64,000 nt of DNA from positions 22,444,001 to 22,508,000 of the forward strand of contig NC_043000.1 in NCBI RefSeq assembly GCF_006345805.1, written 5' to 3'. Within the stretch, counting starts at the first letter, position 1. Each line of letters starts with the position of its first letter. Positions 5,281-54,028 of this stretch are shown in pieces. The stretch comes from Octopus sinensis (Eukaryota). A program made the translations under genes and the position numbers. Below the pieces are notes generated by a model. The model did not search any database, was not told where the DNA came from, and saw only the letters and a list, made by a program, of their open reading frames with translations.

Positions 5281-5466
5281 ATCCCATTATTTTTTCCTCT
5301 TGATGTACAAAAATAAAAATTACACACATATATTTTTAAACATTATGTGTAAATGTGTTTATATATCTTGATAAATATCTTCAAATCCCGCCAAGGCCAA
5401 CTCTGATATTCATCCTTCTAGTATCGATGAAATAAAATTTATAATAATGAACTTATTGTATACATA

Positions 5467-5697
5467 ATTCTTTACTACCCACAAGGGGCTAAACACAGAG
5501 AGGACAAACAAGGACGACAAACGGATTAAGCCGATTACATCGACGCCAGTACGTAACTGGTACTTATTTAATCGACCCCTAAAGGATGAAAGGCAAAGTT
5601 GACCTCTGCGGAATTTGGACTCAGAACGTAACGGCAGACGAAACACTGCTAAGCATTTCGTCTGGCGTGCTAACGTTTCGGCCAGCTTGCCGCCTTC
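5467..5697 (-). mobile_element. tRNA-headed SINE family A
   Basis: Near-identical to 45443-45676, 52570-52797 and 25030-25255: head gaaggcggc-agctggc, B-box gagttcaaattcc, tail cccttgtggg-agtaaagaa. Confidence 0.9.
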
Positions 5698-15382: not shown

Positions 15383-15835
15383 TTCATTATAAATATTAAC
15401 CTTACTCATTAATTTAATCCCAAATCTTAATGGAAAACTTTTGCTATACCCCTGCTTGAAATCTGGTGACATTGGGTGTGGCAGCACACCCAATACAACC
15501 ACCACCATATGCCACTTACCTCTTTCCATTCCCACCTGACTGTCTTCTCCCTCTCTTTTAAATGTGAGTAGTCATGTAGCACCTCCTCAGCAAGAAACCT
15601 GCTCTGCCCACTTCTCTCATATTTTATCCATAGCATCTCCTAGCATAAAGCTCCCAACCAACCTCAGCGTTTGTAGTCATGCAAGCTGCATGGCAACCTC
15701 ACTAGTGTTGATGGCATGAAAAATGCACCTTGTACATGCTGTAAAGGAGTTGGTGTTAGGAAGGGCATCCAGCTGTATAAACCATGCCAAAAGAGACAGC
15801 AGAGCTTGGTGCAATAATCTGATTTGCCCATTTCT

Positions 15836-16060
15836 TATTTCTTTATTGCCCACAAGGGGCTAAACATAGAGGGGACGAACAAGGACAGACAAAGGGATTA
15901 AGTCGATTACATCGACCCCAGTGTATAACTGGTACTTAATTTATGGACCCCGAAAGGATGAAAGGCAAAGTCGACCTCGGCAGAAATTTGAACTCAGAAC
16001 GTAATGGCAGACGAAATACTGCTAAGCATTTTGCCCAGCTTGCTAATGTTTCTTCCAGCT
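15836..16060 (-). mobile_element. SINE family A lacking its first ~10 nt, fused 3' of a 5S rRNA copy
   Basis: Homologous to 5467-5697. Its head joins an A-run (T-run on plus, 16060-16069). Confidence 0.9.
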
Positions 16061-16073
16061 TTTTTTTTTCTAC

Positions 16074-16191
16074 GCTTACAGCACCTAGGTTTCCCAAGCA
16101 GTCACCCATCTAAGTACTAACTAGGCTTGACATTGCTTAACTTGGGTGATCAGATGAGAACTGGTGCTTTCAACGTGATATGGCCGTAAGC
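16074..16191 (-). pseudogene. 5S rRNA-derived retrocopy, full length (118 nt), no poly-T terminator
   Basis: Minus strand GCTTACGGCCATATCACGTTGAAAGCACC..GATCACCCAAGTTAAGCAA..GTTAGTACTTAGATGGGTGACTGCTTGGGAA..GGTGCTGTAAGC. Helix I pairs fully, boxes A and C are recognisable, and there are CpG-decay-type substitutions. Followed by GTAG and ~A10. Confidence 0.92.
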
Positions 16192-16759
16192 CCATTTCTG
16201 CCCATTTCTGTCAAACCATCCAACCTATGCCAGCATGGAAGATGGACATGAAATGATGGTGATGATGATGATGATGATGATGAAACAAAGTATAGTCCAG
16301 TCCTGGGTACATTCTCTCTCTCTCTCTCCTTCCCTCTCTCTCCCTTCTCCTTCCCCTCTCCCTGAATTGTTCCTGTAATTCAAAAGGTCCAGCCTTGTCA
16401 TATTGTGTCCCTGCTGATTCAACTTGAGAATTTCCTTAAATGTACATGCATCTGTGGAATACTCAAACACCGGTTTGTTAATTTCATCAAATAGGAATTC
16501 AGCTGATTGAACAATTGATTATTCATCATTGAGACAACTGACTGAAAGACCCATCACAGACACAGTGGTGCCATTCGGGTGTGTGCCACCTGGAATAGCT
16601 GTTGAGTTTGCTGCCCCTTCTCACTGGACACTCCAGCCTATACAGGCTTATACACCAGACCCCAAAAGTTCTTCCCCCATACAAGTGTTGCCCTGGGTGA
16701 AACCCACCCTAACTCCAGCCATGCTATTGCACACATACATTTGCACATATACAAGTACT

Positions 16760-20730: not shown

Positions 20731-21278
20731 TGTGCGAAGGGCCACCCAAAAGAAACTGGAATTTTGGAATATTATTTTGTTTATTTATTTTTACATGTTT
20801 ACACTTTTATCACCATCAAAGTATTTTCCATTTGAAGCCATGCATCAGTCCAGATGCGTTTTCCGCTGTTCGAAGCAGTCCTGGAACTCATAAAGTGATG
20901 CCTTTTAACGTCTCCATTGTTTTGTTCTTCACCTCTTCCACACCTGCAAAACGTTTTTCTTTAAGGACTTTTTTCATTAGGGGGAACAAAAAAAACGTTG
21001 CAGGGAGCAAGATTGGGTGAATGGGGAGGGTGAGTAAGTGGGGTGATGCCACTTTTGGTCAAAAACTGTCTCACACTCAAAGCGGTGTGCGCAAGCGCAT
21101 TGTCATGATGAAACCACCACTCTCCACTTTGCCAGAGGTCGGGGTGTTTTCGTTTCACTGTGTCTTGGAAATGCTTCAGAACTTCCAAGTAAAATGCCTG
21201 GTTAACAGTTTGACTAGGAGGAACAAATACTGTGTGAACAATTCCTTTTGCATTGATGAAGCAAATCAGCATTGTCAT
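20731..21278 (-). mobile_element. mariner transposase relic 1 (C-terminal half plus one TIR)
   Basis: MLICFINAKGIVH..TVNQAFYLEVLKH..KRKHPDLW..WWFHHDNALAH..HPPHSPNLAPC. TIR-like gtgcgaagggccacccaaaagaaactggaat at ~20733. Confidence 0.9.
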
Positions 21279-21603
21279 AAGGAGGAGTTTAAATGGGAAA
21301 CGATGCCCCATCCACCATATTCGCTGGATATTTCCCCATCTGATTATCATTTATTCTGCAGTCTTCAAAATCATTTGGATGGAAAAAAATACGAATTTTG
21401 TGAATGAAGTCAGAACAGTACTGGAAGAGTATTTTTCATCACAGACAAGTGAATTTTGGAAGAAGGGCCTTGCACATTTACCAGACAGATGGAAGAGCAT
21501 TGCAGAAAATGAAGGAGAGTATATTCTAGATTAAAAAAAGAACTTTGTTTATCTTAATTTTGAAAAATAAAAGAACCTCATTATTTATGGTATGACCCAG
21601 TAT
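21279..21603 (+). mobile_element. mariner transposase relic 2 (different subfamily, C-terminus plus TIR)
   Basis: WETMPHPPYSLDISPSDYHLFCSLQNHL, then frameshift, ..FWKKGLAHLPDRWKSIAENEGEYILD*. TIR-like attatttatggtatgacccagtata. Confidence 0.9.
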
Positions 21604-52026: not shown

Positions 52027-52558
52027 TTAATAAAAGAAAGATCACATTGGGTATTGTAGTCACAGATTTCCAGCCATGATCATTCCCCACCAAATTGGCT
52101 GACCATAGAAATGCTTTGATTATGATCATGTTCACTCAAGGCTGACCTGGGGCTAAACAACAATTTACATGCACACACACACATGTAAACATATGTTACA
52201 CACACACACACACACCTGTGCATCTACATATTAAAGCTTGTAACAAAATGACACTGAAAACCACATACTGTAATAGTTTGTTTAATGCAATTGCCAACAG
52301 CAGCAACAAATATTAGCATGCTTTCATTCATTTACTTAATTCTCGTGTTTAATTACTTGTTCAGCAAAATTCAACGATGATACTTCATCAGCATACAGTG
52401 TGTGTGTGTGTGATCAGCAATGCCAATAGCTCTGAAATGGATATCATAAACTTTATTGATTGTGAGATTCCTAAAAATGTTTTGTCATTGCTTCTTTTCT
52501 TAACAGATGACATGCAGTGACACCACACGTAATTTGTCTTTCTGTACTTAATAATCTT

Positions 52559-53025
52559 AATAATCTTAAAACGAGATGGCAGAATCGTTAGCACGCCGGG
52601 CGAAATGCGTAGCCGTATTTCGTCTGTCGTTACGTTGTGAGTTCAAATTCCGCCGAGGTGGACTTTGCCTTTCATCCTTTCGGGGTCGATAAATTAAGTA
52701 CCAGTTACGCACTGGGGTCGATGTAATCGACTTAATACATATGTCTGTCCTTGTTTGTCCCCTCTGTGTTTAGCCCCTTGTGGGTAATAAAGAAATATGT
52801 ACTTAATAATCTTTTCTACTCTTGGCACAAGGCCTGAAATTTGGGGGAAGGGACTAGCCAATTACATTGACCCCAGTGTTTCACTGGTACTTAATTTATT
52901 GACCCAGAAAGGATGAAAGGCAAAGTCGACCGTTGCGGAGTTTGAACTCAGAGCGTAGCGGTTGACGAAATGCCGCTAAGCATTTCAACCAGCGTGTTAA
53001 CGATTCTGCCAGCTCACAGCCTTTT
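52559..53025. mobile_element. tail-to-tail SINE A (+) and SINE A' (-) pair
   Basis: TGTACTTAATAAT occurs three times, at 52543, 52798 and 53028, bracketing the two copies. Confidence 0.85.
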
Positions 53026-54028
53026 TCTGTACTTAATAATAACACGAGCAAAATTAACCAAAATCTAACATACACCACATGTATACTGCTTATTCACACA
53101 CATACACACACGCTAAAGAGAATTTCAACATGATTGCTCAACTTGTTGGAAATAGCAGTCTAATCTCCCTCAAATCACTTAAAGACGAATTTTTTTTGAT
53201 AATGCAGTCCTGGATTTCCTGCTCATAGGAAAGAGAGGAAAGGGTCACAGTAAGAAGGCCTTTGATTTTTGACCTGGGGTTAAACAACACCAGCAGCAAC
53301 TCTTATACTATACATGCACACATACACACTCATATTTTTAGCTATTGATTTGTCATATGAGTATAATATTTATGTAATAATATTCATATCATCATCATCA
53401 TCATCATCATTTAGTGTCCATTTTCCATGCTGGCATGGGTTAAACAGTTTGATTAGAACTGGTAAACTGAACAGCTGCACCAGACTCCAATCTCTTTTGG
53501 CTTGATTTCTATGACTGAATGCTCTTCCTGACACCAACCACTCCATAGGATATACTGGGAGCTTTTTACATGTCACAGGCATGAGTACTTTTAACATGTC
53601 ACTTCTTTATATAGCTGTCCTCGTCTGTAGCTTAATCAATACAATAAAATTTGTTATAGTTACCCCCCCCCACCTCACCATACATACATATATATTTGTC
53701 TTCATCATCATCATTGTTTAACATCTATGCTCCATGCTGGCATGGGTTGGACAGAATCTGCTGGGTCCAAGGACTGCATTGTTCACAACACACACACTCA
53801 TATTTTTAGGCAGGGTTTCAAGAATAAGAGATTAAGTACTTAATATATGTTGCATTGTATTTTTATATGAATTAAGCTGGTTTCTTGATTGGTGCTTTCA
53901 TTCAGATAATGGTAAACATGCACATAAATATAGTTAAATTCATGTTTACAATCACCAGAAAGAGCACATTTAATAGGAAGCTTTGTGTGGCAATGAAATA
54001 AGTCATCAGCTTCATACTTTGATATGTA

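What the first reader, a model, noticed from the sequence alone, without database searches (positions are those of the whole stretch)
15826..16209. 5S rRNA-poly(A)-tRNA-SINE chimeric retroposon inside a single TSD (candidate composite SINE3)
Seen, reading the minus strand: a full 118-nt 5S rRNA copy with no T-run terminator, then GTAG and ~A10, then SINE A minus its first ~10 nt. GCCCATTTCT occurs at 15826-35 (left) and at 16190-99 and 16200-09 (right), but not between the two modules. The host RTE 3'UTR rejoins across the insert. Established: 5S carries an internal Pol III promoter, 5S-headed SINEs (SINE3) exist, and template-switch chimeras such as U6-L1 form during LINE reverse transcription. 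Inference: this integrated as one molecule, either a one-off template switch from SINE RNA to oligo-adenylated 5S RNA or a member of a dimeric 5S/tRNA SINE family. Without a terminator, the 5S promoter could transcribe the whole unit.
Basis: partly seen in the sequence, partly recalled or inferred. Interest (0 to 1): 0.78.

Follow-up and report, generated by a model that had tools for sequence, protein, structure and literature searches.

The report
5S rRNA–SINE chimeric retrocopy, one insertion
A reverse-transcribed copy of 5S ribosomal RNA with a short A-tail is fused head-to-tail to a slightly 5'-shortened SINE and sits inside a single target-site duplication, so the two went in together as a dead by-product of retrotransposition; this kind of chimera is already known in other organisms and is thought to be how 5S-headed SINEs begin.

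Summary
On the minus strand the layout is: AGAAATGGGC twice, then a full-length 5S rRNA copy (Rfam 96.6 bits, 16191-16073), GTAG, A10, a SINE lacking exactly its first 10-11 nt (16059-15836), then AGAAATGGGC once.

The 10-mer occurs nowhere else in the 64 kb. Neither module has its own duplication. The joined flanks with one 10-mer copy align straight through the insertion point with about 12 other copies of the host repeat.

Both modules have lost a similar share of CpGs (57% and about 57-75%), against 14% for the five other SINE copies, so they look the same age. A neighbouring locus with two independent insertions keeps the duplication between its elements, unlike here.

Best reading (0.6): one target-primed reverse transcription event in which the enzyme jumped from SINE RNA nucleotide 11 to an oligoadenylated 5S RNA. 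This is a bipartite chimeric retrocopy, a known class.

A propagating 5S/SINE family could not be tested, because no genome of this organism was searchable; the window holds only one copy. "tRNA-derived" for the SINE and "RTE 3'UTR" for the host are unverified. Still unexplained are GTAG and the extra upstream 10-mer copy.

It is a new member of a known kind, of moderate-to-low interest.

The parts
16200..16209 (-). Outer upstream copy of the target-site duplication, AGAAATGGGC on the minus strand. It continues directly from the host repeat (...GGTTTGAC).
   Evidence: Alignment of host copies shows that a single copy fits the host consensus.
16190..16199 (-). Inner, extra tandem copy of the same 10-mer at the 5' junction. 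Its last two bases (GC, 16191-16190) are also 5S nucleotides 1-2, so it is either 8 extra nt plus a 2-nt microhomology or a full second copy.
   Evidence: A similar partial TSD repeat lies at the 5' junction of SINE copy 52577 (AATAATCTT, 52561-52569).
16073..16191 (-). Full-length 5S rRNA retro-copy (pseudogene). Helix I is intact; three base pairs are broken in helices II and III; only 3 CpGs remain; there is no T-run terminator.
   Evidence: Rfam RF00001, 96.6 bits, model 1-120. It is the only 5S in the window even at a permissive threshold. CpG o/e is 0.46.
16070..16072 (-). TAG. With the preceding G at 16073 it forms the GTAG spacer between the end of 5S helix I and the A-run. It stands where a Pol III transcript would normally carry 1-3 U. 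Its origin is unexplained.
   Evidence: direct reading.
16060..16069 (-). Uninterrupted A10, read as the oligo(A) tail of the 5S RNA that served as acceptor template. It occupies the place of the SINE's missing first 10 nt.
15836..16059 (-). SINE ('SINE A'), 224 nt, starting at consensus position ~11 (GCTGGAAGAA...) and ending with the family's normal 3' end ...AATAAAGAAATA. It belongs to the same subfamily as copy 24846-25030.
   Evidence: It has lost 8 of 14 ancestral CpG sites.
15826..15835 (-). Downstream copy of the target-site duplication, AGAAATGGGC, followed by the continuation of the host repeat (AAATCAGATTATTGCACC...).
15692..15825 (+). Host repeat, 5' portion. The element's sense strand is inferred to be '+', opposite to the insert. 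It belongs to a family with about 18 copies in the window.
   Evidence: The copies have variable 5' starts and a common 3' end.
16210..16281 (+). Host repeat, 3' portion, ending in a (GATGAT)n tail on the + strand. It resumes exactly where the 5' portion stopped once the insert and the extra 10-mers are removed.
15789..15792 (-). First run of four or more T on the sense strand downstream of 5S +1 (offset 400), in host sequence 44 nt past the SINE end. This is the first possible Pol III terminator for a transcript started at the 5S.

Best explanation
This is a one-off bipartite chimeric retrocopy made in a single target-primed reverse transcription (TPRT) event.

Proposed sequence of events:
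1. A LINE-encoded reverse transcriptase began copying a SINE RNA from its 3' tail at a nick in the host repeat.
2. Ten to eleven nucleotides before the 5' end of the SINE RNA, it switched template to the 3' end of a 5S rRNA molecule. That molecule carried a short non-genomic tail (GUAG + about A10, probably surveillance-type oligoadenylation).
3. It copied the 5S to its first nucleotide.
4. The cDNA was joined to the upstream target end at a GC microhomology, with an extra copy of the target 10-mer.

The product is 5'-[5S][GTAG A10][SINE minus its first 10-11 nt]-3' inside one 10-bp target-site duplication. It has since decayed, with heavy CpG loss and three broken 5S helix pairs, and it has no function.

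Shown here: the anatomy, the single TSD, the clean empty site and the equal decay of the two modules. Inferred: the template switch itself, the adenylated 5S intermediate, and which LINE supplied the enzyme.
For: - The 5S is full-length. The SINE is 5'-truncated by exactly 10-11 nt and keeps the family's normal 3' end. Both lie in the same orientation.
- One 10-11-nt direct repeat flanks the composite: P about 0.002 or less, and the 10-mer occurs nowhere else in 64 kb.
- Each module alone has only a chance-level 5-mer as a candidate repeat (P about 0.5).
- The flanks joined with one 10-mer align without interruption with about 12 other copies of the host repeat.
- Internal control: at 52545-53045 two independent insertions into one target left the target three times, including between the two elements. 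That pattern is absent here.
- CpG clock: the focal SINE lost 8/14 ancestral CpGs, against 9/65 in the five other copies (p = 0.0013). The 5S lost about 57-75%, which is indistinguishable from its SINE partner (p = 0.43-1.0) and different from the other SINE copies (p = 0.005 to 5e-5).
- The same machinery left a head-to-tail array of 5'-truncated SINEs with no TSD between the units at 25270-24690. It also left extra bases or partial TSD repeats at other 5' junctions.
- The locus meets four of the five published criteria for bipartite chimeric retrogenes. There is a direct precedent of a full-length cellular RNA fused to a 5'-truncated SINE inside 12-bp repeats.
- 5S/LINE-1 chimeras are known in humans.
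Against: - The modules are not directly joined: 14 nt (GTAG + A10) lie between them, and GTAG is not explained by a normal 5S 3' end.
- There are three copies of the 10-mer rather than two. The extra one at the 5' junction has only an ad hoc explanation.
- The target AGAAATGGGC does not resemble the (T/G)GTAY-type starts of the TSDs of the other four SINE A copies read here.
- No empty orthologous site, no other genome copies and no RNA data could be examined.
- The 5S CpG-loss estimate rests on structure-based inference and on general knowledge of 5S sequences, not on this organism's own 5S gene.
- In human chimeras, 5S segments are usually truncated and often antisense, unlike here.
Confidence: 0.6

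Rival explanations
1. The locus is one copy of a propagating composite SINE: a 5S head, an A-rich linker and a SINE A body and tail (SINE3-like or dimeric). It would be transcribed by Pol III from the 5S internal promoter of a master copy and mobilised through the SINE A 3' tail. The founding fusion happened earlier, at another locus.
For: - The 5' boundary coincides with 5S +1, as expected for a Pol III transcript started at the 5S.
- There is no T4 run within the 356-nt unit; the first lies 44 nt downstream.
- The normal SINE 3' end needed for recognition is retained.
- Composite 5S/tRNA-SINE families exist and are thought to arise this way: HaSE3 and the Deu-SINE/AmnSINE1 heads. SINE3 families arose several times independently.
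- An A-rich linker is what dimeric SINEs carry (own knowledge: Alu).
Against: - The window holds only one 5S and one junction, against about 12 SINE A/B copies, even in a permissive Rfam scan.
- The 5S part is a complete 1-120 copy with an intact helix I, rather than a promoter-only, diverged head as in established SINE3 families (describes divergence outside the promoter boxes).
- Retroposed 5S copies are expected to be silent or weak because type 1 promoters depend on upstream signals (argument quoted).
- No cephalopod or mollusc 5S-headed SINE turned up in the literature searches.
Confidence: 0.15
2. There were two independent insertions. Either a 5S-poly(A) retropseudogene inserted first and the SINE later landed exactly at the end of its A-tail, or the SINE inserted first and a 5S-poly(A) copy later landed at its 5' edge with a 10-bp target deletion and no TSD.
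For: - A-runs and the ends of existing retroelements are reused as targets. This window shows one target hit twice (52545-53045).
- Three copies of the 10-mer exist, which at first sight suggests two duplications.
- SINE 5' truncation is common on its own.
Against: - The third 10-mer lies upstream in tandem, not between the modules, so it does not fit two TSD-generating events in either order.
- Neither module has flanking repeats beyond a chance 5-mer.
- No A-run remains downstream of the SINE, so the second nick would have had to fall exactly at the A-tail/TSD boundary.
- An A-run does not resemble this SINE's other targets.
- The two modules show equal and unusually heavy CpG decay, whereas typical SINE A copies here are much younger.
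Confidence: 0.1
3. It was a single insertion, but the fusion was made at the RNA level before reverse transcription. An RNA ligase (RtcB-type) joined a 5S-derived RNA to a 5'-cleaved SINE RNA, and the chimeric RNA was then retrotransposed through the SINE tail.
For: - U6/L1 chimeric RNAs form by RtcB ligation independently of retrotransposition.
- This would give the same final anatomy: one TSD, same orientation, 5'-truncated 3' partner.
Against: - The ligation needs a 2',3'-cyclic phosphate (or 3'-phosphate) donor end. 5S rRNA is not normally so modified, and an oligo(A) tail added by a poly(A) polymerase ends in 3'-OH (for the requirement; the rest is inference).
- In-window SINE-SINE arrays without intervening TSDs are at least as easily explained by RT template jumps.
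Confidence: 0.07
4. It is an artefact or a DNA-level rearrangement: an assembly chimera, or non-homologous recombination that placed a 5S pseudogene next to a SINE.
For: The region is extremely repeat-rich, with about 18 host-repeat copies, about 12 SINE copies and large microsatellites.
Against: - The boundaries are exact: the RNA 5' end on one side and the SINE 3' end on the other.
- The A-tail, the flanking duplication and the seamless reconstruction of the host repeat are hallmarks of retroposition, not of misassembly.
Confidence: 0.03

Closest known systems
Bipartite chimeric retrogenes made by LINE reverse transcriptase template switching (human U6/L1, U3/L1, 5S/L1; Magnaporthe MINE = WEIRD-MGL and the WEIRD-Mg-SINE chimera)
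   Same: A full-length small cellular RNA lies at the 5' side and a 5'-truncated retroelement at the 3' side, in the same orientation, with one short direct repeat around the whole (criteria). WEIRD-Mg-SINE is the same small RNA + truncated SINE layout with 12-bp repeats. 5S rRNA is a known partner, making up 10.5% of 253 human chimeras.
   Different: Here the 3' partner is a non-poly(A) SINE of an invertebrate genome rather than L1. The 5S is complete and in sense orientation, whereas human 5S segments are usually truncated and often antisense. A 14-nt GTAG + A10 spacer separates the parts instead of a direct join. An extra copy of the target lies at the 5' junction.
HaSE3 of Helicoverpa armigera (a SINE3 family: 5S head + body and tail of the tRNA-derived HaSE1)
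   Same: It is a 5S rRNA sequence fused upstream of the body and tail of a resident SINE. Its authors attribute it to a template switch from the SINE RNA to 5S rRNA.
   Different: HaSE3 is a multi-copy family found in several species, and its 5S head replaces the tRNA head. The focal element is a single observed copy, keeps almost the whole SINE (only 10-11 nt missing), and has an A10 linker.
AmnSINE1 / Deu-SINE subgroup with a composite 5S + partial tRNA promoter region
   Same: The 5S sequence is fused to the 5' end of a SINE head, giving a 5S-then-SINE-head order. This too is explained by a template switch from SINE to 5S rRNA.
   Different: [quoted passage not shown] No Deu domain was looked for here, no family is shown, and the SINE head here is not demonstrably tRNA-derived.
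Simple 5S rRNA retropseudogene
   Same: It is a full-length 5S copy followed by an A-run, with no terminator, dispersed away from any 5S array, and decayed.
   Different: The A-run is not followed by the target-site duplication. It is followed by a SINE that shares the duplication with the 5S 5' end.

Membership tests
Bipartite chimeric retrogene (criteria of Gogvadze/Buzdin) | (i) The 5' part is a full-length copy of a cellular RNA. | tested here: met
   Rfam 5S_rRNA, 96.6 bits, model positions 1-120, not truncated.
Bipartite chimeric retrogene (criteria of Gogvadze/Buzdin) | (ii) The 3' part is a 5'-truncated copy of a retroelement RNA. | tested here: met
   The SINE starts at consensus position ~11. 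Four other copies begin (G)AAGGCGGCGA directly after their TSDs.
Bipartite chimeric retrogene (criteria of Gogvadze/Buzdin) | (iii) Truncation points are random among independent chimeras. | not testable with these tools
   There is only one instance, and no genome of the organism could be searched.
Bipartite chimeric retrogene (criteria of Gogvadze/Buzdin) | (iv-a) Both parts have the same transcriptional orientation. | tested here: met
   Both read on the minus strand.
Bipartite chimeric retrogene (criteria of Gogvadze/Buzdin) | (iv-b) The parts are directly joined. | tested here: not met
   GTAG + A10 (14 nt) lies between the end of 5S helix I and SINE position 11. I read it as a tail on the acceptor RNA, so this is a variant rather than an exclusion.
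Bipartite chimeric retrogene (criteria of Gogvadze/Buzdin) | (v) The whole chimera is flanked by short direct repeats, and its parts are not. | tested here: met
   A 10-11-nt repeat flanks the composite (P <= 0.002). Only a chance-level 5-mer flanks either part alone.
SINE3 / composite 5S-headed SINE family | A 5S rRNA-derived head lies at the 5' end. | tested here: met
SINE3 / composite 5S-headed SINE family | There are many dispersed copies sharing the same head-body junction, each with its own TSD. | not testable with these tools
   Within the 64 kb there is only one copy. The ORF probe, the junction-pattern scans and the fetched contigs gave nothing from this genome.
SINE3 / composite 5S-headed SINE family | The internal type 1 promoter (box A, IE, box C) is intact and transcribed. 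| tested here: inconclusive
   The regions are present. Compared with the human 5S sequence (from my own knowledge), boxes A, IE and C differ at 4, 1 and 4 positions, and some of these are probably lineage-specific. No expression data and no reference 5S of this organism were available.
SINE3 / composite 5S-headed SINE family | There is no internal Pol III terminator, and the 3' tail is shared with mobilisable elements. | tested here: met
   There is no T4 run within the unit; the first is at offset 400. The 3' end ...AATAAAGAAATA is identical in type to that of other SINE A copies. The partner LINE was not identified.
   There is no Rfam tRNA hit at E<=10 on a well-preserved copy. ARAGORN gives nothing at default or -ps settings, and only 'tRNA-???' at -ps80. 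No B-box match was found with <=2 mismatches. GAGTTCAAATTCC is B-box-like by eye only.
   About 12 copies. Their TSDs include GGTATATA, TGTATACAATA and TGTACTTAATAATCTT.
   The copies show LINE-like variable 5' truncation and a common 3' (GATGAT)n tail. None exceeds about 215 bp, and no RT-like ORF of 110 aa or more exists in the window. No RTE reference was available for comparison.
Functional 5S rRNA gene | A T-run terminator lies directly after the gene, the gene sits in a tandem array, and its helices are intact. | tested here: not met
   The gene is followed by GTAG + A10 with no T-run. It is the only 5S in 64 kb. Three base pairs are broken in helices II and III. CpG o/e is 0.46.

The most novel reading that the evidence does not exclude
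The locus is a member, or the fossil founder, of a so far undescribed dimeric 5S/SINE family in this (probably cephalopod) lineage. It would be transcribed from the 5S internal promoter through an A-rich linker into a resident SINE, and mobilised through that SINE's tail. That would catch the birth of a SINE3-type element at the stage where the complete 5S and almost the complete SINE are still both present.
Probability: 0.15. Interest if true: 0.55.

Novelty: new member of a known kind. Interest (0 to 1): 0.35.

Why it matters
Composite SINE heads (SINE3, AmnSINE1, HaSE3) are explained in the literature by a reverse transcriptase jumping from a SINE RNA to 5S rRNA. That step is normally inferred from old, remodelled families.

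This locus shows the raw product of such a jump: a complete 5S, its A-tail, an almost complete SINE and one target-site duplication. It comes from an invertebrate genome whose SINEs do not use poly(A) tails.

It is therefore a clean textbook example. It extends template-switch chimeras beyond L1 and the fungal MGL element, and it suggests that oligoadenylated 5S RNA can be an acceptor template. It does not change any concept, and the copy itself is a decaying pseudogene with no sign of function.

Tried and rejected
**Searches for other junction copies outside the window (all failed)**
- I used the 57-aa ORF that spans the 5S/A10/SINE junction as a protein probe against the 5.8-billion-protein collection. 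No candidate was returned, not even the window's own ORF, so such repeat ORFs are not indexed.
- I scanned for a degenerate junction pattern (GGTGCTGTAAGC, a gap of 1-30 nt, then GCTGGNAGAA) in JGI metagenome contigs and in GTDB genome contigs. There were 6 + 2 hits, about the number expected by chance. BLAST showed that only the pattern words match.
- I tried to sample the source genome through the mariner-like transposase remnant. The best relatives are <=72% identical and lie on metagenome or Logan contigs. None of the eight fetched contigs contains the SINE, the host repeat or a 5S.
- I tried to read the 1983 paper reporting invertebrate 5S RNA sequences to obtain a reference 5S. It is not held.

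**Ideas considered and rejected**
- A10 is the SINE's own first 10 nt after mutation. This would need 7 substitutions in 10 nt, in a copy that is about 5% diverged.
- An APOBEC-like strand-biased editing signature. The changes are both G>A and C>T at CpG sites, so this is ordinary CpG decay on both strands.
- A regional methylation difference as the sole cause of the heavy CpG loss. The whole window is CpG-poor (o/e 0.2-0.5), including the flanks of the CpG-rich young SINE copies, so the difference reflects age.

**A correction made along the way**
- My first null model for the TSD gave P = 0.10. It was inflated by microsatellites, and I replaced it with complexity-filtered and random-composition nulls.
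Full report
**1. What is there**

Read on the minus strand, the region is:
- host repeat ...GGTTTGAC
- AGAAATGGGC (16209-16200)
- AGAAATGGGC (16199-16190)
- 5S rRNA (16191-16073), whose first two bases GC are the last two of the second 10-mer
- A10 (16069-16060)
- a SINE from GCTGGAAGAAAC (16059) to ...GGGCAATAAAGAAATA (15836)
- AGAAATGGGC (15835-15826)
- host repeat AAATCAGATTATTGCACC...

The 5S assignment is not in doubt. Rfam RF00001 gives 96.6 bits against a gathering score of 38, E = 9e-20, model positions 1-120, untruncated. It is the only 5S in the window, even in a permissive scan at E<=1. The other hits in that scan are microsatellite-driven microRNA false positives. ARAGORN finds no tRNA in the window.

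**2. The SINE and its truncation**

The 224-nt 3' module matches about 12 other places in the window. Full-length copies (45445-45676 +, 5695-5465 -, 25256-25031 -, and the related 53012-52848 -) begin (G)AAGGCGGCGAGCTGGCAGAA directly after their own target-site duplications. They end ...GTAGTAAAGAAATA directly before the second TSD copy.

The focal copy has the normal 3' end but starts at GCTGG. It therefore lacks exactly the first 10-11 nt, and the A10 run sits in their place. Turning AAGGCGGCGA into A10 by point mutation would need seven changes, so this is a truncation plus foreign A's.

I could not confirm that the SINE is tRNA-derived:
- There is no Rfam tRNA match at E<=10 on a well-preserved copy.
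- ARAGORN reports something only at its loosest setting.
- There is no B box within two mismatches.

**3. The duplication and the empty site**

GCCCATTTCT occurs at 15826, 16190 and 16200 and nowhere else in 64 kb. The flank windows of the composite share 11 nt (AGAAATGGGCA). For comparable pairs of windows, a shared word of >=10 nt has P = 0.002 at real, complexity-filtered positions and P = 0.0007 with random composition. My first null, P = 0.10, was inflated by microsatellites and was discarded.

The 5S-A10 module alone and the SINE alone each have only the 5-mer AGAAA as a candidate flanking repeat. That is chance level, P about 0.5.

Both flanks belong to a repeat with about 18 copies in the window. 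When the flanks are joined with one copy of the 10-mer, the multiple alignment is collinear with 13 other copies with only a 1-nt gap. About 12 BLAST alignments then run straight across the joint, for example query 613-807 against 53575-53384. So the pre-insertion site had one AGAAATGGGC, and the second upstream copy is extra.

The host copies have variable 5' starts and a common 3' end at a (GATGAT)n tail on the + strand, as 5'-truncated non-LTR elements do. None exceeds about 215 bp, and there is no reverse-transcriptase ORF in the window. 'RTE 3'UTR' therefore remains a guess.

**4. One event or two**

Two TSD-generating insertions into the same target would leave the target between the modules. 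The window contains exactly such a case. At 52545-53045, TGTACTTAATAAT is present three times: before SINE A (+), between SINE A and an oppositely oriented SINE B, and after SINE B. In the focal locus nothing of the kind lies between A10 and the SINE; the third copy is tandem to the first, upstream of the 5S.

Insertion of the SINE into the A-tail of an older 5S retropseudogene would require a nick exactly at the A-tail/TSD boundary, because no A-run follows the SINE. It would also require a target unlike this SINE's others.

An age test also favours co-insertion:
- The window is CpG-poor throughout (o/e 0.2-0.5). The other five SINE A copies are still CpG-rich (o/e 0.87-1.34) and have lost only 9 of 65 inferred ancestral CpG sites.
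- The focal SINE has lost 8 of 14 (Fisher p = 0.0013), although it has only 4/195 private non-CpG differences.
- The 5S module retains 3 CpGs. At least 4-5 losses can be inferred from broken or wobble pairs next to TG/CA dinucleotides: a C.A mismatch and a G.U pair in helix II, an A.C mismatch in helix III, a G.U pair in helix IV, and loop C. Up to 9 can be inferred by comparison with typical animal 5S sequences, which is my own knowledge and unverified for this organism. That gives 57-75% lost.
- This loss is indistinguishable from the SINE partner (p = 0.43-1.0) and different from the other SINE copies (p = 0.005 to 5e-5).

The two modules therefore look equally old, and older than the typical SINE A copy.

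**5. Mechanism**

The anatomy fits the published definition of a bipartite chimeric retrogene: a full-length cellular RNA at the 5' side, a 5'-truncated retroelement at the 3' side, the same orientation, and short direct repeats around the whole. That paper also describes a full-length cellular RNA (WEIRD) fused to a 5'-truncated Mg-SINE inside 12-bp repeats. 5S rRNA is a known partner in human LINE-1 chimeras, making up 10.5% of 253, although there it is mostly truncated and antisense.

The accepted mechanism is a template switch of the LINE reverse transcriptase during TPRT. Applied here, cDNA synthesis started on the SINE RNA tail, reached SINE nucleotide 11, jumped to the 3' end of a 5S RNA carrying GUAG + about A10, and ran to 5S nucleotide 1.

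The A-run argues that the acceptor was an adenylated 5S RNA. Oligoadenylation of aberrant or precursor 5S by nuclear surveillance is established in yeast (my own knowledge); its involvement here is an inference.

The window gives circumstantial support that this machinery jumps templates. At 25270-24690 a full-length SINE is followed directly by a copy starting at position ~40 and then by a related SINE starting at position ~17, with no TSD between them.

Extra nucleotides at 5' junctions are also common for this SINE: a 9-nt partial repeat of the TSD at copy 52577 and TTG at copy 45455. This makes the extra 10-mer at the focal 5' junction look like a by-product of 5'-end resolution. That explanation is ad hoc.

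An RNA-ligation route (RtcB) is the documented alternative for U6/L1. It needs a 2',3'-cyclic phosphate donor, which 5S rRNA and a polymerase-added A-tail normally lack.

**6. Could it be a family (SINE3-like)?**

The features that would allow propagation are present:
- The 5' end is at 5S +1.
- There is no T4 run in the 356-nt unit; the first is 44 nt downstream, at 15792-15789.
- The SINE 3' end is intact.

Families of this build exist: HaSE3 and the 5S + tRNA heads of Deu-SINEs/AmnSINE1. SINE3 families arose repeatedly, and RTE-based chimeras with 5S can seed SINEs (Kojima 2018, cited).

There is no positive evidence for a family here, however:
- The window holds one copy, against about 12 SINE copies.
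- The 5S is a complete copy rather than a remodelled head.
- Retroposed 5S promoters are expected to be weak (argument quoted).
- The literature searches turned up no 5S-headed SINE in cephalopods or other molluscs.

I could not search the organism's genome. The ORF probe, two collection scans and a contig-sampling attempt all failed. The organism itself is not verified. The 5S type and the repeats look molluscan or cephalopod to me, but that is memory, not a test.

**7. Unexplained**

- GTAG lies between the end of 5S helix I and A10, where 1-3 U would be expected.
- A third copy of the 10-mer is present.
- The target AGAAATGGGC is unlike the (T/G)GTAY starts of the other SINE A TSDs, and its first six bases repeat the SINE's own tail (AGAAAT).

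**8. Verdict**

Integration as a single molecule is well supported (about 0.85 over all single-event mechanisms). A one-off template-switch chimera is the best specific reading (0.6), and a family is possible but unsupported (0.15).

This is a new member of a known kind. It is a neat illustration of the step from which 5S-headed SINEs are thought to arise, but it is not a new concept, and the copy is a decaying pseudogene. Interest 0.35.

Noticed in passing
window 24690-25270 (minus strand): There is a head-to-tail array: a full-length SINE A (about 25256-25031), then a SINE A starting at position ~40 (25030-24846), then a related SINE with a different 3' half starting at position ~17 (24845 to about 24680). 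No TSD lies between the units. This looks like serial template switching onto the 3' ends of other SINE RNAs in one event. Short inverted matches (TTCCTATAACT / AGTTATAGGAA) flank the array and were not resolved.
   Followed up: partly
window 52545-53045: One target was hit twice. SINE B (minus strand, 53012-52848; TSD ATTATTAAGTACA in its own orientation) inserted first. SINE A (plus strand, 52577-52797) then inserted with a 16-nt TSD, TGTACTTAATAATCTT, that includes SINE B's TSD plus 3 nt of its tail. The target is therefore present three times. SINE A also carries a 9-nt partial repeat of its TSD (AATAATCTT, 52561-52569) and a non-canonical 5' end (AAAACGAGATGG).
   Followed up: yes
window 5465-5695, 24846-25256, 45445-45676, 52566-52797 versus 15836-16059: Four of the five SINE A TSDs start with (T/G)GTA(T/C): GGTATATA, TGTATACAATA, GGTAT..., TGTACTT.... 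This suggests an endonuclease target preference, and the focal insertion (AGAAATGGGC) does not share it. The sample is small.
   Followed up: partly
window 32343-38960 (also 31116-31680): There is a 6.6-kb imperfect (AT)n microsatellite: 3413 copies, 80% matches, GC 6-11%. A further 0.56-kb (TA)n block lies just upstream. This is unusually long for a dinucleotide array and a likely trouble spot for assembly.
   Followed up: partly
window 20961-21407, both strands: Two mariner/Tc1-type transposase remnants lie on opposite strands, with DDE-region motifs such as HHDNALAHTA and PPYSLDISPSDYHLF. The best database relatives are PF01359 transposases at <=72% identity on metagenome contigs that do not share this window's repeats.
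   Followed up: partly
window 45978-46048 (+): There is a sub-threshold tRNA match (Rfam 24.9 bits against a gathering score of 29). Its sequence, GGGAATGTGGCTAAGTGGTCAGGG...GTAAGTTCAATACTCC, has clear A- and B-box-like motifs. It is probably the head of a different, genuinely tRNA-derived SINE family.
   Followed up: no
window 24480-24615 (minus strand): A fourth SINE head (positions ~13-113) is cut off by a copy of the (CATCAT)n-ended host repeat. This is a nested insertion of the host-type repeat into a SINE, so the host family was active after at least some SINE insertions.
   Followed up: no
whole window, 2-kb bins: Background CpG o/e is 0.14-0.5 almost everywhere, while young SINE A copies have o/e 0.87-1.34. 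The SINEs act as transient CpG islands, and CpG loss can serve as a relative clock for insertions in this genome.
   Followed up: yes
window 16282-16345 (minus strand): A (CAT)n run and then a (GA)n/(GGGAGA)n purine-rich block lie directly upstream of the host repeat's tail. Several Rfam 'microRNA' hits elsewhere (7.5, 10-12.5 and 62 kb) are likewise artefacts of TG/TA-rich simple repeats.
   Followed up: no
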